A stretch of 64,000 nucleotides of DNA from Hydrolagus colliei (taxonomy: Eukaryota): the NCBI GenBank assembly GCA_035084275.1, contig CM068756.1, positions 14,260,001 to 14,324,000 of the forward strand, written 5' to 3'. The translations under genes and the position numbers were made by a program. The notes under the pieces were generated by a model. It worked only from the letters and a program-made list of their open reading frames with translations. It did no database searches and was not told where the DNA came from. Of this stretch, positions 14,400 through 62,700 are shown piece by piece (position 1 is the first letter of the stretch; each line of letters starts with the position of its first letter).

Positions 14400-17300
14400 T
14401 CAAGTTTTTACATGGTCAACAATGAAGATGGTCAACACTATCACTACCAAGAAACAGGATATAAACCGTAAAATCATCATATTCTCCGACATTCCACCAT
14501 AACCTAGAAAACAAATATCGAAATTAAAATCTACTGAATAATTCTACTGTATTGGGAACATGTACAGTTTGTGAACTAATTTCTATTGGAAGGTAGAATG
14601 AGGTGGACGAATATTATGAATTTGTGTGATTGAAAACAACAGAGAATTGTCAGGAACATGAACGCACAGACATGCTTTAGTGATGTTATAGAGCCACACA
14701 TATATTATGGGGTAGCCATTCCCCTGAGTCTGTGTGCTCAGCTTCAAATACACCAGAGAGAATGACTGTTCCGAACCAAGGCTTGGAGAGTTGGGCACCA
14801 TTATAATCAAAACTGATTCCATTAGACATCTACTATCAAATAGAAAAGTCTGTAACACATCTCACAAACTATTTAGATTTTAAGTGCAGCGAGTGTTGCT
14901 ATAAAGGGAAAAGAAGCCGAAGATGTTTCCCAACAAAGCCTCAGAATATTGAATATATTGATAAATGATATTATTTGTGCTTTATTTGTGAAAATGTATC
15001 AGTGGAAAAGTCCAGTTACTGGTTTCACCCCTAATTGCTGGTGGAGAGTGCAGGTCTATAGCAGCCTCTCTGGACAAAGGAAAAGTGATTCAAAGTTTTG
15101 GATTCACGACCATTCGTCTGAACTGCGTTAATAATATTTTGACTGGGTTAATAACTCCGGAAAAGAGATCTGTGATTGACTAACAACTGGGTTCCCACTT
15201 ATTGCTGGGTAAACAGACGCCCAATGTTTCGTTGTGTCCGGGAATCAAACCCAACAACAACAACACTTACATTTATATAGCGCCTTTCACATCGAGATGA
15301 CGTCCCAAGGCGCTGTACAGTCAGGTAGGACAAGAGCAGGGTGGGAAGGATCAGGGCAGGATGAAGAATAGTAGGAAAAGTAACTGTATATTAGTGGGCG
15401 AAACGCGGCAGCCAAATTGCGCACAGCAGTGTCCCACAAACAATCGCGAAAATGGGGCCAGGGGAGAAAGGGGGAAAAGAGGGTAAGGGGGGGAGAGGGA
15501 GGGAAAGGTGGGATGGGTTAGGGTTAGGGAGGAAGAGGGGGGAGAAAGGGGGGTAAGGAAGAGAGGGAGGGAAAGATGGGTGGGGGCAAGATCAGGAAGA
15601 GGGAAGAGGGAGGGAAGGGGAAAAGGGAGGAGAGAAAGTGGGGAAAGGGAGTGAGGGAAGAAGAAGATGGGGGCAGGGATGGGGGGAATCAAACAACAAT
15701 AATAAACAACAAAAGCAATAATATTAACAACAAAACCCAGGTCCCCCCCTCGAGAGAGAGGCGAGTGCTCTAATCACTGAGATACACGACTCCACTGATA
15801 CAGGAGATTCTGATGAATAATAATCCTAAAAGCAGCCAATTTTCCACATACAATGTACCATAAATAGTCATGGCGTTAATAACCAATTTCACCTGCTGTG
15901 TTTATCAGCCAGAACAAAGGGAGGAAGAATCTTACTTCACTTTTTGAATAGTACCATGGCCTCATTAACCTGAACAAGCCACAAGGACCTCACTTCAATG
16001 TCCCATCCCAATAGCGGGAAGCCACAGACTGCTCCCCCAGCATTACACTGGATTGCCAGTGACTTGGGACAATATTGATACATGTGTTTGGAATAGATTA
16101 GTATATTAGACAGCGTAAACATTCTGCTTACGGTGCTACGGAGGGTTATAAATATTTGAAAGCCTTGTTAACTTTAGACAATTATGCATATAACATATGA
16201 ATACTATTTCATTGTTAAGCAAAATAACCAATGTAAATATTGCATCTAATCCCAATCTGTGCATTTTTTGTGATCAGAATTAGCAACAACAACAAAATTA
16301 CATCTGTAAAGCACATTTCACGATTAGATGGAACTCAGAACTGAATACAGCTGGATATGTATTAGTTTACGGCAGCTGTAGCTAATGACATCTGGTTACC
16401 ATTGCTCTTGACTTTATTACTCAGGCGAGAGCGACACACAGAATACCAAAATGGACCATTGCTTATCAGAGGAACCCTCACAAAATACAATCCATAGATT
16501 GTAGAGCAAGAGACTGCTGTACCTATTGACAGCTGATCACAGCGATGAAACACAATCACTTGTTAATAAAAGGGGGAACATGACGGGATGGGAAGATGTT
16601 TGATGCTGAAGTGTCCTGAGGTGTCCCGAGCATTTGAAAACTATGCGGGTTCAGGATGCCACCACTTATTGGTTAGGTTTATCAAAATGTTTGATTTATT
16701 CACTTAAAATGTTCCACATTCAAACAGTATAATGTATTTTATCACCATTTCGTACAATCTCCTGATCACCTTTCTCCTATTTGTCTCCTATCAACTCTGG
16801 CATCGCTTCCTATCCCTGCAGGTCTCCCGGGAGAGAGAGCAAGTCACATTCCATCCCTCAAGTCACAGGCAGGAGCTGCCAAACATTGACTTGTCCCTCG
16901 GCCTCTCTTCTTCACTGTCTGTAAGCTCCCACTTGGCGACATCACCCGCAGAGTATGTCCACATGTATATACACGAACTCTCCCATGTTCCTCCACACTG
17001 AACATCCACCATTAACCCAATTAGTGCCAAACATCAAGTCCTTTATTGAGCTCTGACTTCCTTCAGCTGAATAATAATAATCTCTGGATTTTATATAGCG
17101 CCTTAGATATCAAACACAATGATTAATATTGTTGCTATTATTATCATCTCATTATTGTTGTCTCAGTTCATTGAAAGGCGCTATACAAATGTAACTCAAA
17201 ATCACCAGAAATGTGACCTCACCTGCAGCACATCCACCCCATAGTGAATAACGGGTTGGATTTTCAATCCCTGGAGAAATAGTACACACTGAGATGAGAC

Positions 17301-22989: not shown

Positions 22990-23835
22990 GTGATAATGCT
23001 CCGCTCTTTCCTTTCAACTCACTCACTTTTTGAACCCCTCCAATCAGGTTTCCGCCCTATCCACAGCACAGAAACTGCCCTGGTTAAGGTCACAAATGAC
23101 ATCCTAACCGCCTGTGACCAGGGCTCCCTCTGCCTCCTCGTCCTCCTTGACCTGTCTGCTGCGTTCGACACAGTCGATCACACCATCCTCCGCAACTATC
23201 TTACCCCCCTCGCTGCCGAAACACTCGTGCATGCATACATCACCTCAAGGCTGGACTACGGAAATTCTCTCCTAATCGGCCTCCCCAGTTCCTCCATTCA
23301 CAGAATGCAGGCCATCCAAAACTCTGCAGCCCGTGTACTATCCCGCACCCGCCTCCGTGACCACATAACCCCCACCCTCGCCCGTCTCCACTGGCTCCCC
23401 ATCCTCCAGAGGATCGAATTTAAGATCCTCGTCCTCACCTACAAGGCCTTACACGGCCTTGCCCCATCCTACCTAACCCATCTACTCTCCCCCTACACGC
23501 CCACCCGGACCCTCCGTTCAACAGGACTTGGCCTGCTCCAAGCCCCCCGCCCGAACCGCCCCACCATCGGAGGCCGGGCCTTCAGTTTCTCTGCTCCCAC
23601 CTTATGGAATGCCATCCCTCAATCCCTCCGTTTCGTCTCTTCCCTTTCCTCTTTCAAGGCCGGTTTGAAGACTTTCCTCTTCGATCGTGCCTTTTGTTCC
23701 ACCCCGAACTCTTTTACCTCCCCTTCGTGTTTCACCCTTTCCCAAACACTCCCCTCCCAGCTCGGGTCACACGCCTCTTGTTTAGCGCCTTGGGACGTCC
23801 TCCCGACGTGAAAGGCGCTATATAAATGTAAATTG
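22990..23835 (+). mobile_element. Internally deleted L2-clade LINE fragment inserted in the old CR1
   Basis: ORF 22990-23811 with [42 protein letters not shown]. (TTG)n tail. Confidence 0.88.
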
Positions 23836-27979: not shown

Positions 27980-28007
27980 GTCTGACTCTGGCTCTGATGA
28001 GCTCAAA

Positions 28008-28045
28008 CACTCACACACACACACACACACACATACACATACACA
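28008..28045. repeat. (CA)n microsatellite just upstream of the G3 ATG
   Basis: Direct reading. A (TG)n tract lies at about 54167-54195. Confidence 0.9.
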
Positions 28046-38598: not shown

Positions 38599-39934
38599 CC
38601 GATCTTCAAGATTGCCCAGTTGAGACAGGTTTCCCTTTGATCCTAAATACACATAAAATTGACTGAATTATACATTTTTAACTAAATTTCAATATTAACA
38701 GTAAAATCATGTAAATATTCCACATTTCGTGATGAGTGAAATACAAATATTCACCTGCACACTTTTCCCTCTCTATAAGTCTCCACATCACTCAAAGTTT
38801 CCGAAATCCTTAACACTGTGAAACTCTTTCCCTAGAACATTTTAAATCTCAAGCTTGGCTACGCAACTACTATTCCATAATTCTTTTAGTTGTTCTTCTT
38901 AAACTTTGTTGTTTCCTGCACTCTGGGCCGAGGTCCATCTCCTGGGACTCTCAATAATAAAAATATATTTTTGATGTAGCAATTTTAATATAATGTATAG
39001 CTGAATTGTATAATAATAATCCTTGCATTCGATATTGATATCTCTAAGCACTTCACAGAATATGCTGTGAAGTGAATTGACTGTATATTTGTGGGTAAAA
39101 CGTGGTAGGCAATTGTGCACAGCAGCGTCCCACAAACAGTTGTGGATTGAAATGACCAATTTTTTAAAAAAAATTGGGGGACGGATTGTTATTAGGCATG
39201 TGGAGTAATGAAACTTGCCCAAGGTTTCGTCCTGATCTGCCTGGATTTGAACACAGGGCTCAAGCTTGTAAGGTGAGAGCTCTAACCACTGCAGGAGCTC
39301 CACTGATTATTGATTACTGCACTGATTACTCCAATATATAATTGATAATATAAAACATACACCTGGCGCTCGTCCATGCATTTACCACTACAGTTTCTGA
39401 CAAATACACATAATTCGTCATATTTTAAGCCAGTTGCAGTATATTCAATCAGATTTCAGACATTAGAAAATTAGAAATTCTGGGAAACTCACATTATGGA
39501 GCTGGAAGAAGCCGCTCCCTTTGCCTTTCACACCAAATGTTTTCCTGCTGTCCACATGTGTGTCCAAGTAGCCGTGCTCACCCTCCTTCTCCCACTGGAA
39601 CTGCAGGAATGAACCGTCTTGAGAGAATAGTAACACACAGCGGAAAGAGACACTTGTCCCTCCGATGGCAACCACACATTCGGGGATTTGAAGAGGTTTT
39701 CCTAAGGAACTGCCATCAACTGTCGGAAGATAAAGTCAAACACAGATATATTGGATGATGTGCCATGAAGAAAACCAAACGAGTAAAAGAGGAACAAACA
39801 AGAGTATATATGAATAAATGGTACAAGGAAACAAGCTTGCACATATTTCATAGAAGAACTAAGTTATAGAATAAACATATACCTGTTGAAATAATATGCA
39901 AGGCAGACAGGTACAGAAAGCCAACACTCCCCAT
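38599..39934 (-). pseudogene. psiA: receptor pseudogene with intact leader and truncated V fused to the 3' region of a G5-class gene
   Basis: Leader 39883-39934. V starts at 39719 and breaks at about 39485 (..NVSFPEFLIF*), losing the second Cys. Orphan 44-nt exon 38599-38642. No C1 or TM between them. Confidence 0.8.
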
Positions 39935-40962: not shown

Positions 40963-43900
40963 GCCCCTCGCCTTCTGCAAATATTTCCTTCAGCTTGCAT
41001 ACCTTCATTTCCTTGCCCACAAAATAGAGAGAACATAATTTCACAGCATAGGAAGTTTCTGTTACTTGAATACCCAGTTGTAGATGTTGAATTGTATGAT
41101 ATTTTTCAGGTCAAACAAGATATTGGTATTTGCCTTGGAATTGCTTAAATTGCTCAAATACATTTTCAAGGGGAAGCACTAAGCTGCCTCGGCCCTTCCG
41201 TCTACTGCCCCATCCCTATCTGTTCCTCATACCCCAGCCACTGCCCATGTCTCCCTCTATACCTTTGAACCTGTCTCCCACTCCTCTCACACCTCCAGTA
41301 TAAGTTGCATAACCAACCACCTACTCCCTTAAACCGTCCCTACCCTCCCAATTCCTCCCAGCTCAACCTCCTTACCCCTCTACTTATAGACAACAAAATC
41401 CTCCATAGATGCACACTCCAGCTTACTAAACCAGTCCAGAAACTTGGCGTCTTGTTTGACCATCAACTATTCTTTCTACCCCCTGCCCCTCCCTTCTTTC
41501 CAACCTCCCAGATCCCGACCCCAGCTCAAGTCTGAAACACTGTCTGTGCAGCACCTTGGGACATCCTCCCGAGGTGCAAAGCACTTTAGAAAGGTAATTT
41601 TGTTGCTATTGTTTTTGATGTTGTTGTTACCTATGGTCACCTCATCCCTCTCTCCCAGGCTGTATAATGGAGCTCAGCCACTGATCAACACTGTGAGATA
41701 CTACTCTGCAATGGAGGGCACTAATCAAATGTAAGTTGTTGCTGTTGTACATTACATTGGTGGATTTTGAAAATGTTTGTGAAATATCATGCTTTCCAAC
41801 TTTAAAAAGCAGCAGAATACTTCCCATATTTTTGGTTGTGCTTTCACGGCAGTTTGGTCCTGTGCTTGTTCTTCAAATTGGCTTCTTTCTGTCAGTAAAT
41901 GACTATGCGTTTCTCCTTCCTTCCCCTTTTTCAAATTATGCCTGCTGACCTTCCTCTTTTTTGTGATTATTACCATTACCCTGGTTTGAAGTGGAGTTCC
42001 ACCTCTGGTAAGCACTTTGAGATACTCCTCTGCTGGAAGAGCTATATATAAATGTGCGTTTGTGACCTCTAGGCTCGACTATGGCAACTCCCTCCTCATA
42101 GGCCACCCCAATGCTTTTCTCCACAAACTGTAGATCATCTTAAACTCTGCAGCTTGTGTTGTCTCCCACCCCAGGGAGATGACATGATCAGCCCCACCAT
42201 TACCCCCACCCTCGCATTGGCTCCATGGGCACCGCATTTCCACAGAGGATTGAAATCAAGATTCTTGTCCTCACTTTCAAGATCCTCCGTGGCCTTGACC
42301 CACCTACCTCTCTGACTCGCTGATGCCCTATCAACCTGTCGACTCCCTCCATTCAGCCGGCTTTGGCCTGCTTCATGTGTCCTGCTCAAGTTGCCTTAAC
42401 ATCAGAGGCTGGGCCTCAGCTTCCCTACCCCTACACTTTGGAACTCTGTCTCACAATCCCTTCACCATAATCCCTTCCTTGCCTCCTTGAAGGGCTGTCC
42501 TACTCTTCGGCTGTGCCTTCAGTCACCCTCCTACCTCTGTGTCCTCCTGCATGTCAACCATTACCCCCAACCCCCCCACCCCTCGTATCCGATCCCTGAC
42601 TATTCAGGGCCTTGGGACGTGCTCCCAACGTGAAAGGCAGATGTATTCTTACTATGTGAGGTGCTGTTGTACCTGTGCGAGTTTTGTGGGCGATAGAGTC
42701 AGTTTAATGCAAACAGTTTCCAAAAAATCTTTCAGTTGGATTAATTGAGGAAGGCACTTTCACATATCTGGCCTTGAAAGTGAGGACAAGGATTTTGAAT
42801 TCGATCCTCTGGGGGATGGGGAGCCAATGGAACTGGGCGAGGGTGGGAGTGATGGGGTCGCGGAGTCTGGAGTGGGAGAGGAAATGAGCTGCAGGGTTTT
42901 TGATGATATGCAGTTTGTGAAGGGCAGAACTGGTAAGGCCGACGGAAGGTGTTTCCATAGTCAAACCTTGATGTTATCAATGCATGGATAAGGGTTATGG
43001 CAGCCCGAGTGGTGAGGCAGTGGTGGAGTCTGTCAATGTTACAGAGACGGTGGAAGGCAGTGTTGGTCATGGAGTGGATGTGTGGAGAAAGGACAGTTTA
43101 GGGTTATACAGGAAACCCTGATTCCAGACTGGCTTCATGAGGTGGAGTGTGCAGCCATGGATGCTGATGCTGCCAGCGCCTGAGGTGCGGAGGCGCTGAC
43201 CCGAGCCAGTCACGTCAGCGAGGGGGAGCATGTCAGTAGGGGGAGCATAGTGAGGGTGAAGAGGAGGAAACTGGGGACAGAGCCCTAAGGAACGCTGCAT
43301 GGGACAGTGCAGGGTTTGGATGAAAAGCTGTTGGCAGACACGAAGTGGAGATGGTGTTAAAGATAGCACCTGAACCAGTCAAGGACAGAACCTTGAGGTG
43401 CGAGGAGAGGTGATGGAGGAGCATTGAATGGTCCATGGAATCCAAGACGGTGGATAGGTCAAGGAAGGTCGAGGAGGCAGAGGGAGCCGTAGCTACAAAT
43501 GACCAGGATATCATTTGTGACCTCAACAAGAGCAGAAATGGAAGAGACAGGGTGATTAGAGGCCCCTCGCCTTCTGCAAATATTTCCTTCAGCTTGCATA
43601 CCTTCATTTCCTTGCCCACAAAATAGAGAGAACATAATTTCACAGCATAGGAAGTTTCTGTTACTTGAATACCCAGTTGTAGATGTTGAATTGTATGATA
43701 TTTTTCAGGTCAAACAAGATATTGGTATTTGCCTTGGAATTGCTTAAATTGCTCAAATACATTTTCAAGGGGAAGCACTAAGCTGCCTCGGCCCTTCCGT
43801 CTACTGCCCCATCCCTATCTGTTCCTCATACCCCAGCCACTGCCCATGTCTCCCTCTATACCTTTGAACCTGTCTCCCACTCCTCTCACACCTCCAGTAT

Positions 43901-46159
43901 AAGTTGCATAACCAACCACCTACTCCCTTAAACCGTCCCTACCCTCCCAATTCATCCCAGCTCAACCTCCTTACCCCTCTACTTATAGACAACAAAATCC
44001 TCCATAGATGCACACTCCAGCTTATTAAACCAGTCCAGAAACTTGGCGTCTTGTTTGACCATCAACTATTCTTTCTACCCCCTGCCCCTCCCTTCTTTCC
44101 AACCTCCCAGATCCCGACCCCAGCTCAAGTCTGAAACACTGTCTGTGCAGCACCTTGGGACATCCTCCCGAGGTGCAAAGCACTTTAGAAAGGTAATTTT
44201 GTTGCTATTGTTTTTGATGTTGTTGTTACCTATGGTCACCTCATCCCTCTCTCCCAGGCTCTATAATGGAGCTCAGCCACTGATCAACACTGTGAGATAC
44301 TACTCTGCAATGGAGGGCACTAAGCAAATGTAAGTTGTTGCTGTTGTACTTTACATTGGTGGATTTTGAAAATGTTTGTGAAATATCATGCTTTCCAACT
44401 TTAAAAAGCAGCAGAATACTTCCCATATTTTTGGTTGTGCTTTTACGGCAGTTTGGTCCTGTGCTTGTTCTTCAAATTGGCTTCTTTCTGTCAGGAAATG
44501 ACTATGCGTTTCTCCTTCCTTCCCCTTTTTCAAATTATGCCTGCTGACCTTCCTCTTTTTTGTGATTATTACCATTACCCTGGTTTAAAGTGGAGTTCCA
44601 CCTCTGGTAAGCACTTTGAGATACTCCTCTGCTTGAAGAGCTATATATAAATGTGCGTTTGTGACCTCTAGGCTCGACTATGGCAACTCCCTCCTCATAG
44701 GCCACCCCAATGCTTTTCTCCACAAACTGTAGATCATCTTAAACTCTGCAGCTTGTGTTGTCTCCCACCCCAGGGAGATGACACGATCAGCCCCACCATT
44801 ACCCCCACCTTCGCATTGGCTCCATGGGCACCGCATTTCCACAGAGGATTGAAATCAAGATTCTTGTCCTCACTTTCAAGATCCTCCGTGGCCTTGACCC
44901 ACCTACCTCTCTGACTCGCTGATGCCCTATCAACCTGTCGACTCCCTCCATTCAGCCGGCTTTGGCCTGCTTCATGTGTCCTGCTCAAGTTGCCTTAACA
45001 TCAGAGGCTGGGCCTCAGCTTCCCTCCCCCTACACTTTGGAACTCTGTCTCACAATCCCTTCACCATAATCCCTTCCTTGCCTCCTTGAAGGGCTGTCCT
45101 ACTCTTCGGCTGTGCCTTCAGTCACCCTCCTACCTCTGTGTCCTCCTGCATGTCAACCATTACCCCCAACCCCCCCACCCCTCGTATCCGATCCCTGACT
45201 ATTCAGGGCCTTGGGACGTGCTCCCAACGTGAAAGGCAGATGTATTCTTACTATGTGAGGTGCTGTTGTACCTGTGCGAGTTTTGTGGGCGATAGAGTCA
45301 GTTTAATGCAAACAGTTTCCAAAAAATCTTTCAGTTGGATTAATTGAGGAAGGCACTTTCACATATCTGGCCTTGAAAGTGAGGACAAGGATTTTGAATT
45401 CGATCCTCTGGGGGATGGGGAGCCAATGGAACTGGGCGAGGGTGGGAGTGATGGGGTCGCAGAGTCTGGAGTGGGAGAGGAAATGAGCTGCAGGGTTTTT
45501 GATGATATGCAGTTTGTGAAGGGCAGAACTGGTAAGGCCGACGGAAGGTGTTTCCATAGTCAAACCTTGATGTTATCAATGCATGGATAAGGGTTATGGC
45601 AGCCCGAGTGGTGAGGCAGTGGTGGAGTCTGTCAATGTTACAGAGACGGTGGAAGGCAGTGTTGGTCATGGAGTGGATGTGTGGAGAAAGGACAGTTTAG
45701 GGTTATACAGGAAACCCTGATTCCAGACTGGCTTCATGAGGTGGAGTGTGCAGCCATGGATGCTGATGCTGCCAGCGCCTGAGGTGCGGAGGCGCTGACC
45801 CGAGCCAGTCACGTCAGCGAGGGGGAGCATGTCAGTAGGGGGAGCATAGAGAGGGTGAAGAGGAGGAAACTGGGGACAGAGCCCTAAGGAACGCTGCATG
45901 GGACAGTGCAGGGTTTGGATGAAAAGCTGTTGGCAGACACGAAGTGGAGATGGTGTTAAAGATAGCACCTGAACCAGTCAAGGACAGAACCTTGAGGTGC
46001 GAGGAGAGGTGATGGAGGAGCATTGAATGGTCCATGGAATCCAAGACGGTGGATAGGTCAAGGAGGTCGAGGAGGCAGAGGGAGCCGTAGCTACAAATGA
46101 CCAGGATATCATTTGTGACCTCAACAAGAGCAGAAATGGAAGAGACAGGGTGATTAGAG
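40963..46159. repeat. Near-identical tandem duplication, 2 x about 2599 bp, of L2/SINE debris
   Basis: Unit 1 40963-43561, unit 2 43562-46159. ORF-track pairs are offset by 2599 and differ by scattered substitutions and one 1-nt indel near the end. Confidence 0.95.
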
Positions 46160-46183
46160 GAGACTGGTTTATAAAACTTGCTT

Positions 46184-46257
46184 TTTATTGAAAGATTGCT
46201 TGAGCATATTGCATAACAGCATCTAAAATTGTTGTAGTTAAACAACTATTTTTTATT
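46184..46257 (-). other. Candidate polyadenylation signals of G5
   Basis: AATAAA on the minus strand at 46252-46257 and 46184-46189, about 280-350 nt after the stop codon. Confidence 0.5.
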
Positions 46258-46533
46258 CAAATAATTCAATCGTTACCGTTATGATGCACAGTGATGTACC
46301 ATCAGATTCACAGTGAATAAATACATTTTGGCAATTAAGCTTGCTTTTATGTATACCATAAGCAATATTTTCCAAGAAATTTCCTGAGGACGTATAATGT
46401 AATAAAGTAATAAATGCAATTATGGTTGTAACAGCTGCAAATAGAACAGCAGCCAGGATTAATATGCACATTATCCACTATGGTGGAAAACTGCATCTAA
46501 TACACACCTATAGCAGTTTCTGTGACTGATGCA

Positions 46534-47492
46534 TTACGTTGGTTCCCTGGAATCAGCGGCGGCTGCTTCTTCCTGGTTCTTCACGTGCAGCTCTTCATAC
46601 TCTGTATTGTTAACGTTAGTCAAATTTATCATGGCATAAACCGCCGGCTGATTATCTGCTCCGTGCATCATCTGTAAAACATAACATGATCACAACAACA
46701 CATTGTATTTGTAGAGCATCTTTCACGTCCCAGGGCGCTGAGAGATTGTTGTCTTCACTGTTCTGAAGATTGCTGTATAAGTATGCATCAGAAAGCCCAT
46801 AAGTTGAAAACATTCGGTAAGAAAAGTGAACATTTTATGTGTTATCAATTATCAATTACATGACACCAGGTATTTGAATGATACATTTAGGAGGCAAAAT
46901 TTAATGTAGGTAATGTATTTAAAATGTTCTTATTTATTTATGATAAACAGTACTGTTTCATTACAACAAATCTGTTTTTAGATTAAACATCCGCTGAAAT
47001 AATATTGGTAATTGTACCTTCTCTTGGCAATGTCTCCATCCCATCTGACTTCTGCGTGGGCCTTTGAAAGAAATTGAATAAATGCAGGATTTACTTTCGG
47101 TTATATTTTGATTTGACCAAGTGAAAAGCGTTTTGAAGATCATGAGCTGCCAAAGTCTGTTTTTCTACATATTTATGTAAAGTTGTCTTTGACTCTAATG
47201 TAAACCCAGGTGATAGAGTTACAGAAATCAGACAAGTACTAATTCATAACCCATCTTGCACTCATATTACTTTCAATGCATTTCCATCCACTGTCCCTGC
47301 TCTCTGGAACTCCAATCTGGAGTCCTTCGAATTCTATCTTTCCTGCACAACCTTCGAGATCTTTGAACATATTAAATCTTGAACTTGGCTACTCCAAACC
47401 ACTATTCCTTAATTCCTTCAGTTTTTCCTCAAAAGAGATTTGGTTGCCCTTGGGACGTCCTCCCGACGTGAAAGGCGCTCTATAAGTGTAAT

Positions 47493-47524
<32 letters not shown>

Positions 47525-50500
47525 GGTCTTTCTCCTGGGACTCTCAATAATACAGATGGTCACAATTTCAATATAATGTGTAGCTGAATTATAATACTGA
47601 TAAACAGACACCTGGTGTGAGTCCCTATATATGTTTGACGCCTTTCATCACTACAGTTACTTACAAATGCACATAACTCATCAGATTTTAAGCTAGTTGC
47701 AATATATTCAAATCAGATTTCAGACGCTATGTGTTAGGAAACTGAGAAATTCTAGGATACTGAGGTTCACTATGAGTAATTGTTACAGTACTGAATCTGT
47801 TGCAATAACTACACAAGTAATTGTTATTGTATAACAGTAGCATCACAGAACTCCACCATCAAATTTGAAGGAACAAGCAAGTAACTTTTCCTCTTTACAT
47901 TGATGCATCTTGAGGTTTTATATCAACGTGTAATGTTTACAATTTTCTTACCATTTTCCTTTTTCAATTGGCATCGCTTCTCAATTATGATCAAAATCAC
48001 CAGAAATGCGAACACAACCGCAGCACATACACCCCATGGTAAATAACAGGTTTCATTTCCACTCCCTGCAGAAATAGCATACGCTGAGGTGAGACTGTAC
48101 ATTGTGTAGGGGAACGATTTATAGATTCATTAGAATAGAAATGTTAGGCAGATCATTGATGAACTATATCTTGCAGTGATTTCAATTAAGTATTTAGCAC
48201 AGTTTCCAGTTTAAATATTATGTCTAAACTTAATCTGTGTATTTATTGAAGTAAGAATAAAAATACAAGGAGACCATCACTGAAAACAGTTTGATATTGA
48301 TGTATCATAACACACGTGTAGCTATCGACACCAGCTCTCGCTTACTTTGATTTTTGCTCTTGTTTTTATTACACAGACGAGGGTGACACAATACAGAAAC
48401 GGAACATTGATTTTCAGAAGAACCCACACAAAATATAATCCATAAATTGTAGAATAAGACATCAGACGATAGCGACATCTGATCACATAGAATCACTTGA
48501 TATTAATAAAGGTGAGTGGGGTGGGTGGGGGTGGGGTGTGGGAGGGGCTGAGAATGATACACGATGGAATTGAAAGACATTTGGTGATCAAGTGCCCTGC
48601 GCTAAAACTGAGGTTTTGAAAATTATACAGGTTTAGGATTTGTTGGTAATGTCCATAACCATTAAGTAGATAATATCGGTTAGGTTTAACAAAATCTTTG
48701 ATGATTCACATCAAACGTTTCACGTTCAATCGGTTTAATGTATATTATTACCAACATGCACAATCTCCTCAGCACCATTCTCAACACATTTGTCTCCTGA
48801 CAACAATGGCATCGCTTCCTATCCTTGCAGGTCTAATGGGAGAGTCACATTCCATCCCTTAAGTCACAGGCAAGTGCTGCTGAACATTGACTGTTCCTCA
48901 GGGCTCTAACCTCGGCCTCTGCCCTTCACTATCTATATGCTCCCACTTGGCGACATCATCCGTCGACATAGTAATAATCCTTGTATTTGATATAGCGCTT
49001 TTCACATCTTCTAGATGTCTCAAAGCGCTTCACAGAATATACTGTAAAGTGGATTGACTGTATATTTGTGGGCGAAACGCGGCAGCCAATTGTGCACAGC
49101 AGCGTCCCCACAAACAGTCGTGGATTGAAATTACCAATTTTATTCTTGTTTTTTGGGGGACAGATTATTATTAGGCATGTGGAGTAAGGAAACTTGCCTT
49201 GTTTCACCCTGAACTGCCTGGATTTGAAACACAAGTCTCACACTTGTAAGGCGAGTGTTCTAACCACTGAGCTACTGGACTCCACAGAGGGTCAACAACA
49301 AGATTTCACATCCACATGTATAACGATGAAACCCAAATCTTCGATCTTACCCCACAACAACATCAAGCTTTGACTTGATTACTGTCAAGCATCAAATCCT
49401 TCAATGAGCTCTGACTTTGTTCAGCTGAAAAATAATAATCTCTGCATTTTATATCGTGATTTATATATTGAATGCAATGATTAATATTTACATTATTGTC
49501 CTTTCAAATCACTTCAGATTATTCACTTTATGAATCAATGCAACTAAACATCCCTATGAGAATTCAATTAACAACAGCTGACTTTTTAAAATTCATTTAG
49601 TATCTCACCTGCGTTAGGTTTAGGGTACAGTGATTATTGTTATGATTATTATTATTATCTTGCTATTTCATCTCAAATCGCTTCAGACGATTCGCCGAAA
49701 GGCGCTATAAAAATGTAACTTTGTTGTTGATGTTGTTTACGAATCTATGCAGCTAAACATCCCTATGAGAATTGAAATAACTACAGTTGATTTTTAAAAC
49801 TCGTTCAGAATCTTACCTGTATAAGGTTTGAGGATGGTGTAGATGGCAATAGCTGAAGTCTTGAGGCTGACGTGAGACATCAGACAAGTATAAACAGACG
49901 CTATCTGGACAGACTGTGTGTCTTCAATAGAGCTAGAGACCTGATAGAGTTCCCACGAGTTCTGCTTTTCTATGGTTACTGTCTCTTCCACCTTGATTCC
50001 CGATGTTGGTGTAATTTCGTTCCCATCTTTATACCATATGAGGGTGAAATCCTTTGGGTAAAACGCAGTAGTTTCACACACAAGAGTCCAATGCTCAGTT
50101 GAATTCCCGGAGAAAATCCTCAGTGGAGTTGGGGGAACTGTAGAACAGATAATGGAGGAAAACCGAATTAATTTTTTTTATCAATCAGCGGGACAAACTT
50201 TATTTTGATTCATTTCTTTGCATCATCTTGATTCCTGAGTGCAAATGGAGGTTTCTGTAGATTCACAAATATCCCCCTCACAGCAGGAGAAGCTTCCTCC
50301 TGCTTTAATTACTGTGTTTTTTAATCAATTAATGTTGATTCATAATCTTTATCTTTCATATAATTACTTAGGTGTTTGTTCAGCAGGTGAAATTGATCGC
50401 TGCAAACTCTCGATCAGAGTAAATAAAGGATTCCTGACAGGTGTGTGCACACTGTTATTCTGGCTCAATTGGTAGCATTCTCGCCTTTGAGTTAGAAAGA

Positions 50501-51941
50501 GATGGGATCAAGCTCCACGTGCAGACTTGGAATTCACATAGTCTATGTTGAAATACCTACTCTAATGCAGTTCTTAGGGTGCATAAAATGAAAGGATTGT
50601 ATTATCTCAGCCTTTAGAGATTTTGATCAGGTAAACAGGGAAACAGTGAGTCTGGAGCAAGAGACTGTAAGCTAGAATCATTACCATGATAGAAAGTTTA
50701 ATTTTGATTTTACTGAGAGGCACCTGGGTCCCAAACAAAATAAAGGCTGAAGCAAAATCCATAACAGCTATTTAACTGAATTTTACAGTCATCTTTCCTT
50801 TGTCTTCTAGATGGATTTTAGATTACGAATGCAAATAACATGGATCAATTCTGTATGTAACCTGTGTAACATTAGAATTTATAAAACTATTTGTTAATTT
50901 GTGCTGAATTATATTATTTTGTGTTTTAGTTTGGCAGGGGTTACTTTTGATGTAATTTTCAAATACAGGTAGACCCCATTTAAAGTTGTTTTGGTCGACG
51001 TTGTTTCACTATTACGTTTCGGATACAGAGGGAACACACATCCATTTAACGTTGTGATGTTCACTGTTACATCGTTCTCCAGCGGGTGCTGCATTGGTGA
51101 GCGTAAGATGGCGTTAGGGCCTGGCCGTCAACAGAGTGACGAGGAGGCAGCAGTGAGTGAGTGAGCCATACAGGCAGTCAGGGAACGAGTGAGTGATCTA
51201 GGCAGGCAGTCGGGGAGTGGGTATAACGTGTTTTTTTAGAATTTTTTTAAAACGAAAAATGTCCAAGAACCTAATTCGAGTTTATACATTAAAAATGTGA
51301 AAAATGTAATCACTTAACGTCGTTTCGATTAAAGCTGCGCGTTTCAAGAACAATCCTACGACATTAAGCAAGGAAAATCTGTACTTTCGCTGTTCATTCA
51401 CTCACCCTGCACAGTTAAATGTGATCCAGGACCTGTTCCAATTCCTGATCCCTGACGGATCACTGAGCAGCGATAGACTCCAGAGTCCTGGAAACTCACA
51501 TTCAGGAACTGGAAGAAGCCGCTTCCTTTGCCTTTCACACCAAATGTTTTCCTGCTGTCTGCCTGTGTGTCCAAGTAGCCGTCCTCACCCTCCTTCTCCC
51601 ACTTCACCTCCTGTCCTGAATCTTGTTGAGTGAATGGAAAGATACAGTGGAAAGTGACGTTTGTCCCTCTGATGACAGTCACACGTTCGGGGATTTGAAT
51701 CACTTTCTCTGAAGAATTGATAGCAACTGTCAGAAAATAAAGTAAAACACTGATTTCTCAGACAATATGCCTTGGACAAAAGTAAGCGAGTAAATAGAGT
51801 ATAAAACGTACGTATAAATGATAAATGGCACAAGGAAACAAGCTTGCAAATATTTCGTAGAAGAACTGAGTTGTAGAATAATCATATACCTGTTGAAATA
51901 ATATGTAAGACAGCGAGGAACAGAAAGATGACCCTCCCCAT
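46534..51941 (-). CDS. G5: VJ-C1 receptor with uncharged TM and a cytoplasmic tail carrying two tyrosine motifs, 329 aa
   Basis: Leader 51890-51941 (MGRVIFLFLAVLHIISTG), V 51406-51726, C1 49817-50137, TM 47952-48065 (GSGNETCYLPWGVCAAVVFAFLVILIIIEKRCQLKKEN), 44-nt exon 47018-47061 (GPRRSQMGWRHCQEK), last exon 46534-46671 (MMHGADNQPAVYAMINLTNVNNTEYEELHVKNQEEAAAADSREPT*). Phases 1,1,1,1,0 give 990 nt. AATAAA signals follow. Confidence 0.85.
50966..51381. mobile_element. Tigger/pogo-like MITE in the G5 V-C1 intron
   Basis: TA|CAG...CTG|TA with imperfect TIRs. Absent from the paralogous G4 intron (37630-37665). Confidence 0.65.
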
Positions 51942-55486: not shown

Positions 55487-56620
55487 CCGATCTTCCAGAT
55501 TGCCCGATCGAGTCAGGTTTCCCTTTGATCCTAAATGTGAATAAAATTTCCTGAATTAAATATTTACTCAATTTTAATACTAAAATAATGTAATTATCCT
55601 ACATTTCGGGATGAGTGAAATACAAATATCCGCCTGGATTATTTAGTCTCCCCCTGAAACTCCATGTCACTCATACTTTCCGAAATCCTTAACATTGTAG
55701 GAATTTTTTCCTTTGAATATTTTGAATCCCAAACTTGGCGATGACTAACCACCACTATTCCTTAATTTTTTAGTTTTTCCTCTTAAGCAGCTTGTAAGTT
55801 TCCTGCACGCTGGGCCTTCGTTTTTCTCCTGGGACTCTCAATAATAAAAACATATTTTTAATGTCACAATTTCAATGTAGTATTTCGCTGAATTCCATTA
55901 CAACAACAACAAAATAACATTTGTATAGCGCCATTCACGTCGGGAGGATGTTTACTGATAAACACACATCTGGCACTAGTCCCTGCATTTGTTTGACACC
56001 ATTCATCAGTACAGTTACTAACAAATGCACACAATTCATCGTATCATAAGGCAGTTGCAATACATTAAGTCAGATTTCTGACATTGAAGGTGGTTAAATG
56101 AGAAATTCTGGGATACTAACATTCACCACGTGAAATTGTTACAGTACTGAATCTGTTGCAATAACTACAAGTAATTTATAAGAACATAAGAATTAGGAGC
56201 AGGAGTAGGCCATTCGGCCCTTCGAGCCTGCTCCGCCATTCAATAAGATCATGGCTGATCTTCTGACCTAACTCTGATTACCTGCCCTATCCCCATATCC
56301 CCCAATCCCTCTATTTTAAAAAAAATCTATCAGTTTCAGCCTTGAAAATGTTCAAAGACTGAGCATCTACAGCCTTCTGGGGTAGTGAATTCCATAAATT
56401 TACTGAGGGTGAATGTGGGTTGTGAAATGTGGCTGTTGTGATTGATGTGATTTGAAACCCACCTTTGCAGTGAAATTGTGAAAATAATAATTATTCCCAT
56501 TAATAGCAGGGAAAGGATAAAAATGTATCTAAACATAAAATAATAGCGTTCAGCATTACTATCATGTTGGTGGTGCTTTCTCCATACTGAATTATTGTTT
56601 TAAGCATCAACTTTGCTTTG
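55487..56620 (-). pseudogene. psiB: ghost gene retaining promoter-like sequence and the 44-nt cytoplasmic exon only
   Basis: 56410-56620 is homologous to the upstream regions of the family (e.g. 19720-19950). 55487-55530 has a good acceptor and a GTAAGT donor (GSKGNLTRSGNLEDR). No leader, V, C1 or TM found. Confidence 0.6.
56178..56407 (-). mobile_element. CR1 3' fragment, related to 5413-7242
   Basis: ATAAGAACATAAGAA tail and matching 3' UTR. Confidence 0.85.
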
Positions 56621-59702: not shown

Positions 59703-62700
59703 TCACTCTGGAAAGGCGTCTGAAAGCGCTTGGCACTGTTGGTTAGCCACCGGAGCTGGAGATGGAAGCCGAGCCATCACATATGACTGTCTGATTTTAT
59801 TTGTCTCTATCTAATATGATATAAATTTATTCTCAAACTGTAAATATTTAAAGATTATCTTCAAGAATGTTCAGCCTCATGGATGTAGAGCTTATGAATA
59901 GGGACACTAATGCTAACATTTATTATGACAACCCAGTAACAGATATGGAAGTCATTACACTAATAATGTATATTGTTGACTGTTGTTCCAGATGCCTGGA
60001 GGTTTGGAGGAGATATCTTTATATCCACTGATTATTAGAGGATCCTCCAATACAACAAATGTTAATTCCCACAATCTAAACTGTCTGGTCCCGGTTACCA
60101 GCGGTTTCCTGTTCATTGATAATTTTATGGGCTACGCTATCAATACAATAATTGTCAATGAAACCACAATATTATTTTGAAACAAAGAATGCCTCCTTAC
60201 CTTTCAAGTTGTGAGATTTTAACATGGTCAACAATGAAGATGGTCAACACTATCACTACCAAGAAACAAGATATAAACCGTAAAATCATCATATTCTCCG
60301 ACATTCCACCATAACCTAGAAAACAAATATCGAAATTTAAAATGTTTACATGAAAATTTGCTGGATAACTAGGCTGTATTGGGAAAATACATACTTTCTT
60401 AATTAATTTCTATTGGAAGCTACAATGAGATGGAAATGATCAACTGTGAATTTATGTGATTGAAAACAACAGAGAATTATTGTGAACATCAATGCACAGA
60501 GAGTTTGTTAATGATGTTATAGAGACAGAGTTATATATTATATGGTAGCAGTTCCCCAGAGACGGTGTGCTTAACTTCAAATGTGCCAGAGAGAATGACT
60601 GTTTTTAAGAGCAGCAATTGTTGCTGTAAAGGAGAAGAAGCGAAAGATTTGCTCCAACAAGGCATCAGAAAATGAAATGGTTTGAGGAAGGAATCTTATT
60701 TGTGTTTTATTTGTGAACATGTAAAGTCGAATTACTGATTTGAAAACGAATTGCAGGTGGAGCGCTCAGGACTATTGCACTTTAGGCAGGTTAGTAAATA
60801 ACAAAACATACATATTGAAGACGAGAAATTTAATAACAAAACAAGAAGTTACTCAGATTTAAAATATTCTGCCTTTCAAAGACTAAATATTTATATATAT
60901 CTTATATGTATATGGCGTTTACAGTGGTAAACATTCTGCGTATGACTGTAAATTTGTTGCTTATATAAATGCAGATGCAATTTCCGGTAACAAAGTGTTT
61001 AAGAATAAAAGAAAGTGAGATAACTAGGCATCCTACCATCCAATTCTGTGTTGAATTTAGAAACTGTGTAGCTCGGAACAGTGGGAAGCTGGTGTCTGAT
61101 GGCAGACAGGAATAAACAGCTACGTTTTGTATAGTTTGTGTCTCTTCTATTTAGTCCGAAACTTCATAAAATCCGTTTGAATTATTTACTTTTTTGAAAT
61201 CTGTCCCCGATTTAACTGCCATCGTTATTCCCAATGAGGCCGACATCTCTCAATATCAGTTTAGGGCACTAAACCTTTGGAGATAGGCCAGACTGGGGGT
61301 AGGTTTGGGGCTAAAACAGTGCAGGATCCGTCCTTTTACAAGATGAATGAAACATTCTTAAATTGTGGCTAAGCCTCTCAGAAGCCGTGTGGAATCTTTC
61401 TCTTCTCATGGAATATTGTGGAATTCCTTCAAATAAATAAATTTATGCACATCCAAGTGGGATATTTGAAATGGAGATGGATAATAGGTTACGGGAATAT
61501 GAAAAGTGGCGGAGAAATTGATTGAACTTCTGCCATCATTCTGGAGCAACAATCAGCTGCATTTAAAAGTGTTTCCAGTCGGAGAGTGTCCCGAAGAAAA
61601 CAGTGGGGATTTCACTAAAATTAGACGGATGGAGTGATTTCTATATTGTTATTCTAATAAAATATTTTGAAGGCCTTAATAATCCCCGAAATGTGAATTT
61701 GACTAACAACTGGGTTCCTACTTATTGCAAGAGATTCTGATTAATAATCATCCTAACAGCAGCCAAATTTTCCACACAAAATGTACAGTACCATAAATAG
61801 TCATGAAGTGAATAACAAACTTTACCTGGGGGTTTCATTAGCCAGAACAAAGGAGGAAGAATCTTACTTCACTTTTCGAATAGTACCGCAACATCATTAA
61901 TGTACACCTGAACATGCCATAAGGATCTCAGTTTAATGTCCCATCCAAATAGCGGGAAGCCACAGACTGCTCCCCTAGCATTACACTAGATTGCCAGTGA
62001 CTTGGGACAATCTCGATACATGTGTTCAGAATAGATTAGTATATTACTAGACAGGGTAAACATTCTGGGTACGGAGGGATGTAAATAGTTGAAAGCAATG
62101 TTAACTTTAGACATTCATGAAAAATCTTTCAATTTAAGTATTAAGCAAAATAACCAGTGTGAATATTACGTCCAGTCTCAATCTGTGAATATCATTGTGA
62201 TCAGAAGTAACAACAAAACAAAATGACACCTGCCGTGAGGAGGACGTACCAAGGCACTGGACCTGTATTAAAATTACAATGAACTCAGAACGTAAAACAG
62301 CTTGATAATATGTCATTTAAGGCAGATGTAGCTGATGACATGTGTTTGAGTTTATTTTTTAATCATTGTTCTTGACTTTATTAGTCAGGCGAGGGTGACA
62401 CACAGAATACTACAATGGACCATTGCTTTTCAGAGGAACCCTCACAAAGTACAATCCATAAATTGTAGAGGAAGATGGCTTTACCTATTGACATCTGATC
62501 ACAGTGATGAAACACGCTCATTTGTTTTTAGTAAGAGGGGGGGAATATGATGGAATGAGAAGACATTTGATGCTGAAGTGTCCTGAGGTGTACCGAGGTT
62601 TTGAAAATTACGTGGGTTTAGGATTCCACCACTTATCGGTTAGGTTTAACAAAATATTTGATGATTCGCTTAAAATGTATGACCTTCAATTCAAATTGGA

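What the first reader, a model, noticed from the sequence alone, without database searches (positions are those of the whole stretch)
46534..48065. Hidden signalling tail of G5: uncharged TM plus YAMI-x9-YEEL
Seen: three small exons absent from the ORF track splice in frame (114 nt phase 1-1, 44 nt phase 1-0, 138 nt to stop). The other two frames of the last exon hit a stop within 7 codons. Tail: ..QPAVYAMINLTNVNNTEYEEL... Known: an ITAM is YxxL/I-x6-8-YxxL/I, an ITIM is S/I/V/L-x-YxxL/V/I, an ITSM is TxYxxV/I. The motif is one residue too widely spaced for a canonical ITAM, and TEYEEL is ITSM-like. Inference: either an autonomous activating receptor with a built-in ITAM or the inhibitory/switch member of the family. 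The sequence alone cannot decide.
Basis: partly seen in the sequence, partly recalled or inferred. Interest (0 to 1): 0.85.

Follow-up and report, generated by a model that had tools for sequence, protein, structure and literature searches.

The report
Shortened SIRPα-like inhibitory receptor tail
The three small exons are real and give one gene in a chimaera-type tandem array of antibody-like surface receptors an uncharged membrane anchor and a two-tyrosine tail, which descends from SIRPα-like inhibitory tails and was shortened by a deletion to a spacing that only looks like an activating motif.

Summary
Exons at 48065-47952 (114 nt), 47061-47018 (44 nt) and 46671-46534 (138 nt) on the minus strand have AG/GT sites and the stated phases. 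With the leader, V and C1 exons they complete a 329-aa protein. The exons are not chance ORFs: elephant-shark (Callorhinchus milii) relatives have the same 114-nt and 44-nt exons, and the tail aligns far above shuffles.

G5 is the only one of six tandem V-C1 genes with an uncharged TM and a tyrosine tail. Four paralogs carry an intact exon for an arginine-containing TM; G2's copy has an internal stop. This is a paired activating/inhibitory receptor cluster.

Relatives in sharks, rays and chimaeras carry four-tyrosine tails. Their second unit matches the human SIRPα SHP-2-binding peptide with both tyrosines in register; ITAM peptides do not match.

G5's last exon is chimeric. Its 5' 57 nt comes from the first tail exon (ITIM tyrosine). 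Its 3' 81 nt plus the 3'UTR comes from the terminal exon (conserved TEYxEL tyrosine). A deletion cut the tyrosine spacing from 20-23 residues to 13.

Best reading: a SIRPα-lineage inhibitory member with a collapsed tail (about 0.6). An ITAM-like gain of function is not excluded (about 0.15). Expression and binding were not tested.

The parts
51890..51941 (-). G5 leader exon (MGRVIFLFLAVLHIIST, phase 0 to 1)
   Evidence: ATG at 51941, donor G|gtatat. The AF2 model puts a helix at residues 2-18.
51406..51726 (-). G5 V-set exon, 321 nt, with a J-like GTGPGSHLTV end
   Evidence: Pfam V-set, E 9.5e-10. 83.8% nt identity to the V exon of C. milii gene B, which is also 321 nt.
49817..50137 (-). G5 C1-set exon, 321 nt
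   Evidence: Pfam C1-set, E 2.2e-8. The best sequence match in the PDB is SIRPα 2wng, E 1.2e-12.
47952..48065 (-). Stalk, uncharged TM and KRCQLKK juxtamembrane exon, 114 nt, phase 1 to 1
   Evidence: AG/GT sites. 78.9% nt identity, without gaps, to the 114-nt TM exon of C. milii gene B (L002 26613-26726). The AF2 model puts a helix at 242-269.
47018..47061 (-). 44-nt cytoplasmic exon (GPRRSQMGWRHCQEK), phase 1 to 0
   Evidence: 30/44 nt identical, without gaps, to the 44-nt exon of C. milii P0004 (GSHRNQNRLNHCEEQ).
46615..46671 (-). 5' part of the last exon (MMHGADNQPAVYAMINLTN), derived from a first-tail-exon (t1) unit; carries Y296
   Evidence: Window 46798-46635, which is the upstream intron, the acceptor and the first 37 nt, is 71% identical to L001 18391-18570, the t1 exon of C. 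milii P0004 (E 1e-22).
46534..46614 (-). 3' part of the last exon (VNNTEYEELHVKNQEEAAAADSREPT*), derived from the family's terminal exon; carries Y309 and the TAA stop
   Evidence: Window 46614-46359 is 74% identical to L001 20016-20270. Window 46603-46301 is 73% identical to L001 5779-6078, which reads EYLELHRRNHEGAAAAICREPRSK*. Both matches run through the stop codon into the 3'UTR.
46252..46533 (-). 3'UTR up to the AATAAA signal at 46257-46252
   Evidence: The homology with the C. milii 3'UTRs continues to 46301. The AATAAA lies 277 nt after the stop.
60201..60315 (-). Arg-TM exon of paralog G6 (YGGMSENMMILRFISCFLVVIVLTIFIVDHVKISQLE). Equivalent exons: 25814-25928 (G3), 34485-34591 (G4), 14397-14503 (G2, with an in-exon stop), about 1-97 (G1). 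G5 has none.
   Evidence: tblastn with the shark P0010 TM gives E 1e-6 to 2e-4. The exons have ag/gt sites.
17196..17270 (-). Relic of an uncharged-TM exon in G2, cut off by a SINE-like insertion
   Evidence: 84% nt identity to the intron and first 73 nt of the G5 TM exon, then divergence into repeat sequence.
38599..38642 (-). Orphan 44-nt exon (GSKGNLSQLGNLEDR) of the C. milii gene-B type. A second copy lies at 55487-55530.
   Evidence: 40/44 and 39/44 nt identical to exon 2 of gene B, with AG/GT sites kept. No TM or tail exon lies beside either copy.

Best explanation
G5 is the inhibitory-type member of a tandem paired-receptor cluster of V-C1 immunoglobulin-superfamily genes in a holocephalan (chimaera-type) genome. 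Its ectodomain is 83-88% (V) and 70-86% (C1) identical to neighbours that splice to an arginine-containing TM exon. Those neighbours presumably signal through an acidic-TM adaptor.

G5 instead splices C1 to an uncharged TM exon, then a 44-nt exon, then a terminal exon. This gives a 70-residue disordered tail with two tyrosines.

Shown: the exon structure and its homology; the paired arrangement; the homology of Y296 to the ITIM tyrosine and of Y309 to the invariant terminal tyrosine of four-tyrosine, SIRPα-like tails; and the origin of the last exon by a deletion that fused the first 57 nt of a first-tail exon to the last 81 nt of the terminal exon, which shortened the Tyr-Tyr distance from 20-23 residues to 13.

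Inferred: after ligand-driven clustering next to an activating receptor, Src-family kinases phosphorylate the tyrosines. These then recruit SH2-domain phosphatases (the SHP-1/SHP-2 orthologs), mainly through the conserved TEYxEL site, and damp signalling from the Arg-TM paralogs. Only four residues separate position +6 of the first site from position -2 of the second. One phosphatase therefore probably cannot clamp both sites with its tandem SH2 domains as it does on SIRPα, so recruitment would be monovalent, or bridged between two receptors, and probably weaker.
For: - Exons, phases and the full ORF.
- Same exon sizes and order in C. milii (TM 114 nt, then 44 nt, then tail exons).
- Tail similarity is far above shuffles: 126 against 29.5 +/- 5.6. 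The G5 tail scores 28.3 bits on a family tail profile built without G5; no shuffle of 500 reaches it.
- Alignments put Y296 on the ITIM position and Y309 on a column that is invariant in 13 of 13 tails.
- Family survey: uncharged-TM members carry (V/L)xYAxL ... TVYAQ ... LTYAxL ... TEYAEL tails, with 20-23 residues from the ITIM tyrosine to the terminal tyrosine in 14 proteins. Arg-TM members have short tails.
- Arg-TM exons lie downstream of G1, G2, G3, G4 and G6 but not G5.
- Ectodomain identities.
- Chimeric origin of the last exon.
- The human SIRPα SHP-2-activating peptide DITYADLNLPKGKKPAPQAAEPNNHTEYASIQTS (PMC5589908) scores 17.6 bits on the shark tail profile; no shuffle of 500 reaches it. 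Both of its tyrosines align in register. The FcRγ ITAM peptide scores 1.1 bits, a score 53 of 500 shuffles reach, and the FcγRIIA ITAM peptide gets no score.
- The best PDB sequence match of the ectodomain is SIRPα.
- The TM helix is modelled and the tail has low confidence.
- About 40 Å of linkage is optimal for SHP2 activation (PMC10231330).
Against: - There is no transcript evidence for this species.
- Neither tyrosine sits in a canonical motif. Y296 has Ala at -2, where the family has V/L/I. Y309 has Glu at +1, where the family and SIRPα have Ala, the residue that SHP SH2 domains favour (own knowledge).
- The 13-residue spacing is far below the 20-30 typical of ITIM pairs. It lies between a canonical ITAM (10-12) and the FcγRIIA ITAM (16).
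- Exons are no better conserved than introns between this species and C. milii (78-84% against 77-80%). The TM exon differs at 15 nonsynonymous and 3 synonymous codons. Purifying selection on the tail is therefore not shown.
- The tail-only database search found no ortholog with the same short tail.
- Profile searches found no bony-vertebrate SIRPα.
Confidence: 0.6

Rival explanations
1. Gain of function. The deletion that brought the two tyrosines to YxxI-x9-YxxL turned an inhibitory tail into an ITAM-like motif. When doubly phosphorylated it binds the tandem SH2 domains of a Syk-family kinase, which would make G5 an adaptor-independent activating receptor.
For: - The spacing of 13 lies between a canonical ITAM and the FcγRIIA ITAM YMTL-x12-YLTL, a peptide the authors of PMC5589908 used to build a Syk-based sensor.
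- Both +3 positions are I/L.
- Y309 changed from the family's YAEL to YEEL. Y296 lost the hydrophobic -2 residue. Both changes move away from SHP-type preferences.
- The linker is too short for bivalent SHP2 binding in cis (inference).
Against: - Both tyrosines are homologs of inhibitory-tail tyrosines.
- ITAM peptides do not resemble the family profile.
- Five paralogs already carry an adaptor-type Arg-TM exon (intact in four), so G5 is the only inhibitory-type gene seen in the window.
- x9 is outside the canonical x6-8.
- Other family tails contain YAQ(I/V)-x10-YATL pairs inside plainly ITIM-type tails, so near-ITAM spacing occurs there without implying ITAM function.
Confidence: 0.15
2. Decaying or unused tail. 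G5 is a recently damaged inhibitory gene whose truncated tail no longer signals. Alternatively, its transcripts end or splice differently: read-through after the TM exon would give ...KKENGKKIVNITR*, and skipping the phase-symmetric TM exon would give a soluble form.
For: - The deletion removed two of four tyrosines, and the remaining motifs are degenerate.
- Exons are no more conserved than introns.
- The array is full of relics: a broken uncharged-TM exon in G2, orphan 44-nt exons, and an Arg-TM exon with an internal stop.
- Both C. milii copies of the P0004-type terminal exon are degenerate. One has a premature stop plus Tyr to Asn; the other has Tyr to Cys plus a frameshift.
- Gnomon models that skip the TM exon exist in relatives (P0001, P0043).
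Against: - All six exons are open and in frame, with canonical splice sites.
- The deletion is in frame and kept the stop codon, the 3'UTR and an AATAAA signal.
- The invariant terminal tyrosine and the KRCQLKK juxtamembrane motif are retained.
Confidence: 0.17
3. Switch motif. TEYEEL works as an ITSM that binds SAP/EAT-2-type single-SH2 adaptors, so the output depends on which adaptor the cell expresses.
For: Y309 has Thr at -2, like TxYxxV/I. The homologous SIRPα site TEYASI has been called an ITSM (PMC5413580).
Against: The +3 residue is Leu, not Val or Ile. Thr at -2 is only one of several residues at this position in the family (S, T, A, V). The SIRPα site is known for SHP binding. No SAP evidence was available here.
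Confidence: 0.05

Closest known systems
Mammalian SIRPα (SHPS-1, PTPNS1) with SIRPβ: a paired inhibitory/activating receptor family
   Same: - An N-terminal V domain with a J-like end, followed by a C1-set domain. SIRPα is the best PDB sequence match.
- An uncharged TM in the tyrosine-tailed member, and basic-TM, short-tailed paralogs with very similar ectodomains next door.
- The relatives' tails repeat an xTYAxLxL ... TEYAxxQ unit that aligns with the human SIRPα BTAM peptide with both tyrosines in register. The spacing is 23 against 24.
   Different: - One C1 domain instead of two.
- The basic TM residue of the partners is Arg near the outer end of the helix. SIRPβ has Lys (own knowledge).
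- G5 has two tyrosines 13 residues apart, not four tyrosines in two pairs 24-26 apart.
- Profile searches did not retrieve tetrapod SIRPα, so orthology is not shown.
- The ligand is unknown.
Predicted chondrichthyan V-C1 receptors, auto-named 'tyrosine-protein phosphatase non-receptor type substrate 1-like', 'SIRP beta-1-like' or 'tapasin-related-like' (C. milii P0004; gene B inside the P0001 model; Heptranchias P0003; Heterodontus P0009; Mobula P0015)
   Same: - The same family: 45-68% protein identity, the same exon plan, the same GKRCQL juxtamembrane motif and the same tail motifs.
- The C. milii cluster on MU249845.1 at 15.25 Mb is collinear with the window at 70-78% nt identity, introns included.
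   Different: - Those tails have three to five tyrosines, or a single ITIM-plus-terminal unit spaced 20-23 residues. None has G5's 13-residue spacing.
- G5 is a mosaic. Its ectodomain and TM region are closest to C. milii gene B. Its 44-nt exon and last exon are of the P0004 type.
ITAM-bearing chains (FcRγ, DAP12, CD3, CD79) and the non-canonical FcγRIIA ITAM
   Same: Two YxxL/I sites close together. Acidic residues lie around the second tyrosine.
   Different: - x9 instead of x6-8.
- No sequence resemblance of ITAM peptides to the family profile.
- The motif arose by deletion inside an ITIM-type tail.
ITIM/ITSM pairs that bind SHP-2 bivalently (PD-1, PECAM-1, BTLA)
   Same: A membrane-proximal ITIM-like site is followed by a TxYxx(hydrophobic) site.
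   Different: The spacing in those receptors is 23-25 residues (own knowledge). About 40 Å of linkage is optimal for SHP2. G5's four-residue linker cannot span that distance.

Membership tests
SIRPα-type inhibitory receptor | V-set domain followed by C1-set Ig domain(s) | tested here: met
   Pfam V-set and C1-set. The top PDB sequence hits are SIRPα 2wng and SIRPγ 4i2x. The AF2 model folds as V plus C1.
SIRPα-type inhibitory receptor | Three ectodomains (V-C1-C1) | tested here: not met
   Only one C1 exon lies between the V and TM exons. The same holds in all relatives.
SIRPα-type inhibitory receptor | Four cytoplasmic tyrosines forming two SHP-binding pairs | tested here: not met
   G5 has two tyrosines 13 residues apart. 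Relatives have the four-tyrosine form.
SIRPα-type inhibitory receptor | Tail sequence related to the SIRPα tail | tested here: inconclusive
   The SIRPα BTAM peptide scores 17.6 bits on the shark tail profile, and no shuffle of 500 reaches that. However, database-wide profile searches returned no named tetrapod SIRPα.
SIRPα-type inhibitory receptor | Binds CD47; recruits SHP-1/SHP-2 when phosphorylated | not testable with these tools
   Needs binding assays.
Paired activating/inhibitory receptor cluster | Tandem paralogs with similar ectodomains, some with a charged TM and short tail, others with an uncharged TM and tyrosine motifs | tested here: met
   Five Arg-TM exons (four intact; G2's has an in-exon stop) against one uncharged-TM, tyrosine-tailed gene. 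V identity is 83-88% to G1, G2 and G4, and 70% to G3.
Canonical ITAM | YxxL/I-x6-8-YxxL/I | tested here: not met
   YAMI-x9-YEEL.
Canonical ITAM | ITAM spacing conserved in homologs | tested here: not met
   The homologous tyrosines are 20-23 residues apart in 14 relatives. G5's spacing results from a deletion.
Canonical ITIM | (S/I/V/L)-x-Y-x-x-(I/V/L) | tested here: not met
   Y296 reads AVYAMI, with Ala at -2. Y309 reads TEYEEL, with Thr at -2. The position homologous to Y296 is V/L/I-x-Y-A-x-L in most relatives.
Canonical ITSM | T-x-Y-x-x-(V/I) | tested here: not met
   TEYEEL has Leu at +3. This is ITSM-like only.

The most novel reading that the evidence does not exclude
A single in-frame deletion fused two tail exons and converted a SIRPα-lineage inhibitory tail into a working, adaptor-independent ITAM-like motif (YxxI-x9-YxxL). 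The accompanying changes, loss of the hydrophobic -2 residue and Ala to Glu at +1, also move the motifs away from SHP preference. That would be a natural, datable example of an inhibitory receptor switching signalling polarity by changing tyrosine spacing rather than by swapping its TM.
Probability: 0.15. Interest if true: 0.65.

Novelty: new member of a known kind. Interest (0 to 1): 0.4.

Why it matters
This places a SIRP-like paired receptor system, with arginine-TM activating genes and a tyrosine-tailed inhibitory gene, in holocephalans. With the shark and ray relatives, it places that system at the base of jawed vertebrates. The tail unit there matches the human SIRPα SHP-2-binding peptide in register. 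I found no paper describing this family; it exists only as inconsistently auto-named gene models.

G5 is also a clean natural experiment on tyrosine spacing. The same two homologous tyrosines are 20-23 residues apart in relatives and 13 apart here. Tandem-SH2 selectivity, SHP against Syk, can therefore be tested on natural sequences. If the tail simply inhibits, the finding is ordinary comparative immunogenetics.

Tried and rejected
- **Tail-only word-indexed search** with G5 residues 232-329: nothing at E <= 10. No ortholog with the short tail is in the protein collection.
- **Full-length family profile search**: 61 hits, all chondrichthyan. It gives no bridge to bony-vertebrate SIRPα.
- **Exhaustive tail-profile search**: 58 hits. 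They are family members, teleost ITIM-type receptors and one bacterial effector with tyrosine repeats. None of the ten looked up by name is a SIRPα.
- **Foldseek against the PDB**: Fab light chains dominate. This confirms the V-C1 architecture only and does not discriminate SIRP from antigen receptors.
- **Search for an Arg-TM exon belonging to G5, and for tail exons beside the orphan 44-nt exons**: none found.
- **'Last exon is the whole terminal exon with a 30-nt deletion'**, as MAFFT suggested: rejected in favour of the exon-fusion model. The acceptor and upstream intron of the last exon match the first-tail exon of C. milii, not the terminal exon.
- **Exon versus intron conservation as a test of constraint**: no excess, so uninformative.
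- **Literature**: no description of this family. UrIg (V-C1-C2-C3) is a different gene.
Full report
**What the window is.** The 64-kb window has no N. On its minus strand it carries a tandem array of six V-C1 immunoglobulin-superfamily genes. The V/C1 exon ORFs lie at:
- G1: 3989-4414 / 3317-3604
- G2: 19069-19386 / 18259-18546
- G3: 27439-27723 / 26009-26311
- G4: 37604-37972 / 36375-36680
- G5: 51398-51703 / 49794-50081
- G6: C1 only, at 63612-63914

LINE reverse-transcriptase ORFs and tRNA-derived SINEs lie between and inside the genes. The closest proteins are from Callorhinchus milii, at 63-68% identity. The window is collinear with a C. milii cluster (scaffold MU249845.1, about 15.25 Mb, locus L002) at 70-78% nucleotide identity, introns included. 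The source is therefore a holocephalan other than C. milii.

**Observation check.** The three exons are exactly as described.
- TM exon, 48065-47952: 114 nt, cag|G...G|gtaaga, phase 1 to 1.
- Exon 2, 47061-47018: 44 nt, aag|G...G|gtacaa, phase 1 to 0.
- Exon 3, 46671-46534: 138 nt, cag|A...TAA.

The other two frames of exon 3 stop at codons 1 and 6. With the leader (51941-51890), V (51726-51406) and C1 (50137-49817) exons, the CDS is 990 nt and encodes 329 aa. Pfam finds V-set and C1-set domains. An AlphaFold model (mean pLDDT 79.5) shows a signal helix, two Ig domains, a TM helix at 242-269 and a low-confidence tail. The TM segment LPWGVCAAVVFAFLVILIII is uncharged. The tail reads ...QPAVY296AMINLTNVNNTEY309EEL..., with 13 residues from Tyr to Tyr. 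An AATAAA lies 277 nt after the stop.

**Are the exons real?** Yes, by homology.
- C. milii P0004 ('SIRP beta-1-like', 360 aa), Heptranchias P0003 and Heterodontus P0009 align with G5 over 97%, 97% and 73% of its length; for the first two this includes the tail.
- In the C. milii genome, the P0004 gene has a TM exon of 114 nt, then a 44-nt exon (GSHRNQNRLNHCEEQ), two 111-nt tail exons and a terminal exon.
- A second C. milii gene, 'gene B' in L002, has exons of 321, 318, 114, 44, 111 and 165 nt, all in frame.
- The G5 cytoplasmic tail scores 126 against the P0004 tail (shuffles 29.5 +/- 5.6). Exons 2 and 3 together score 93. Exon 3 alone scores 60.
- G5 exon 2 is 30/44 nt identical, without gaps, to P0004's 44-nt exon.

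**Context: a paired-receptor cluster.** tblastn with a shark relative's TM found a second kind of TM exon downstream of the C1 exons of G1, G2, G3, G4 and G6. It reads YGGMSENMMILRFIFCFLVVIVLTIFIVDHVKISQLE, has ag/gt sites and runs phase 1 to 2. An arginine sits five residues into a 21-residue hydrophobic stretch, and the tail that follows is short. The same ...R...LVILxLxGIIVDHV... TM occurs in Heptranchias and Scyliorhinus proteins.

G5 has no such exon, and it alone has the uncharged TM plus tyrosine tail. G5's V domain is 83-88% identical to those of G1, G2 and G4 (70% to G3). Its C1 is 70-86% identical to the others. From established knowledge of KIR, LILR, SIRP and related families, this is the layout of activating (adaptor-coupled) and inhibitory partners. 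C. milii has the same arrangement: Arg-TM exons at L002 753-842 and 15518-15622, next to the uncharged-TM gene B.

**What the tail descends from.** Across 61 chondrichthyan relatives, members with an uncharged TM carry tails built from a repeated unit: (V/L/I)xYAxLxL, then a basic spacer, then TVYAQ; then LTYAxLxL, a basic spacer, and (S/T)xEYAE(L/V) near the C-terminus.
- The distance from the ITIM tyrosine to the terminal tyrosine is 20-23 residues in 14 proteins.
- In the tail alignment, G5's Y296 falls on the first ITIM tyrosine. Y309 falls on the terminal tyrosine, the only invariant column (13 of 13).
- A profile of twelve relatives' tails, built without G5, gives G5's tail 28.3 bits; no shuffle of 500 reaches that.
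- The same profile gives the human SIRPα SHP-2-activating peptide (sequence from PMC5589908) 17.6 bits, again with no shuffle of 500 reaching it. The peptide aligns to ltYAtleLtgskk.taklkkkersteYAelkr with both tyrosines in register.
- The FcRγ ITAM peptide scores 1.1 bits, a score 53 of 500 shuffles reach, and the FcγRIIA ITAM peptide gets no score.
- SIRPα is also the best PDB sequence match of the ectodomain.

The family is SIRPα-like in architecture and tail grammar. True orthology is not shown, because database-wide profile searches did not return tetrapod SIRPα.

**How G5's tail got its spacing.** The last exon is a chimera.
- Its upstream intron, acceptor and first 37 nt (46798-46635) are 71% identical to the first tail exon (t1) region of C. 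milii P0004 (L001 18391-18570).
- From GTTAAC at 46614, through the stop codon and about 230-250 nt of 3'UTR (to 46359 and 46301 in the two copies), it is 73-74% identical to two copies of the C. milii terminal exon (L001 20016-20270 and 5779-6078). The latter copy reads EYLELHRRNHEGAAAAICREPRSK*; G5 reads EYEELHVKNQEEAAAADSREPT*.
- The junction is INLTN|VNNTEYEEL, at 46615|46614.

An in-frame deletion therefore removed the rest of t1, any further repeat exons and the 5' part of the terminal exon. In the P0004 gene this interval is about 1.4 kb. Two of the four tyrosines were lost, and the remaining two moved to 13 residues apart. The ITAM-like look is thus derived, not ancestral.

G5 is also a mosaic. 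Its C1-to-TM region is collinear with C. milii gene B (47531-48969 matches L002 27168-25797). Its exon 2 and last exon are of the P0004 type.

**Mechanism (inferred).** The lineage and the paired context point to an inhibitory receptor. Src-family kinases would phosphorylate it, and it would recruit SHP-type phosphatases, chiefly through the conserved terminal TEYxEL site.

Three features weaken the canonical picture.
- Ala replaces the hydrophobic residue at -2 of Y296.
- Glu replaces the family's Ala at +1 of Y309.
- Only four residues lie between position +6 of the first site and position -2 of the second. SHP2 is best activated by sites linked over about 40 Å (PMC10231330).

Bivalent clamping by one phosphatase is therefore unlikely. 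The spacing of 13 lies between a canonical ITAM (10-12) and the FcγRIIA ITAM (16; sequence). Binding by Syk-family tandem SH2 domains is therefore sterically conceivable, and that is the main rival.

A third possibility is that the tail is decaying or unused.
- Exons are no more conserved than introns against C. milii (78-84% against 77-80%).
- The TM exon differs at 15 nonsynonymous and 3 synonymous codons.
- The array is littered with relics.

My estimates are: inhibitory 0.6, ITAM-like gain of function 0.15, unused or decaying 0.17, ITSM switch 0.05.

**Novelty.** The gene family is present in NCBI only as inconsistently auto-named models: SHPS-1-like, SIRP beta-1-like, tapasin-related-like, Ig lambda-like, NCR3LG1-like, CD276 homolog. 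I found no paper describing it. G5 is a new member of this known kind of system, with an unusual collapsed tail. It is of moderate interest to comparative immunologists and gives a natural test case for tyrosine spacing, but it is not a new kind of system.

Noticed in passing
window 60201-60315, 34485-34591, 25814-25928, 14397-14503, about 1-97 (minus strand): A second TM exon type with an arginine inside the hydrophobic stretch (…MMILRFIFCFLVVIVLTIFIVDHVK…) follows the C1 exon of G6, G4, G3, G2 and G1. It is conserved in sharks. These are the presumed adaptor-coupled activating partners. The G2 copy has an in-exon stop (DHVKT*). The G4 copy is 8 nt shorter, which changes its end phase.
   Followed up: partly
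window 17196-17270 (minus strand): G2 keeps a relic of the uncharged-TM exon upstream of its Arg-TM exon. It is 84% identical to G5's and is cut off by a SINE-like insertion. This suggests that activating genes of the array descend from a unit that also had the inhibitory-type TM exon.
   Followed up: partly
window 38599-38642 and 55487-55530 (minus strand): Two orphan 44-nt exons with intact AG/GT sites are 40/44 and 39/44 nt identical to exon 2 of C. milii gene B. They sit in 0.6-1.3 kb blocks homologous to that gene's introns. No TM or tyrosine-tail exon lies beside them. Read in the phase left by the Arg-TM exon, the 38642 copy would give ...RIKGKPVSTGQS*. Whether any transcript uses them is unknown.
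   Followed up: partly
window about 40963-46160: A 2599-bp tandem duplication, with at least a 300-nt reference stretch 100% identical and ORFs repeated almost identically (41444-41734 = 44043-44333, and so on). It starts just downstream of the G5 3'UTR. It is either a very recent duplication or an assembly artefact.
   Followed up: partly
L002 (C. milii MU249845.1, 15.25 Mb) 10001-29291: The NCBI model P0001 ('tyrosine-protein phosphatase non-receptor type substrate 1-like', 489 aa) fuses two neighbouring V-C1 genes and skips an intact 114-nt TM exon at L002 26613-26726. Including that exon gives a coherent 356-aa receptor with four tyrosines.
   Followed up: yes
L001 5690-5860 and 19930-20100 (C. 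milii): Both copies of the P0004-type terminal exon in C. milii are degenerate. One has a premature TGA and Tyr to Asn in the terminal motif. The other has Tyr to Cys in the ITIM plus a frameshift before EYLEL.
   Followed up: partly
window versus L002, exons and flanking introns of G5: Exon identity (V 83.8%, C1 80.2%, TM 78.9%) is about the same as intron identity (77.5-80.1%). The TM exon has 15 nonsynonymous and 3 synonymous codon differences. The family is evolving fast or under relaxed or diversifying selection.
   Followed up: partly
tail profile A3, hits P0093, P0096, P0101, P0104, P0108: The tail profile also matched uncharacterised teleost Ig receptors with ITIM-type tails, and a BID-domain type IV secretion effector of Bartonella callosciuri that carries repeated tyrosine motifs. 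This fits the known host-motif mimicry by such effectors. I do not reproduce its sequence here.
   Followed up: no
window 5828-6622 (+), 9880-11478 (-), 22990-23811 (+): Reverse-transcriptase ORFs of LINE-type retrotransposons lie between the receptor genes. tRNA-derived SINE copies lie in the G5 introns (for example 48960-49300).
   Followed up: no
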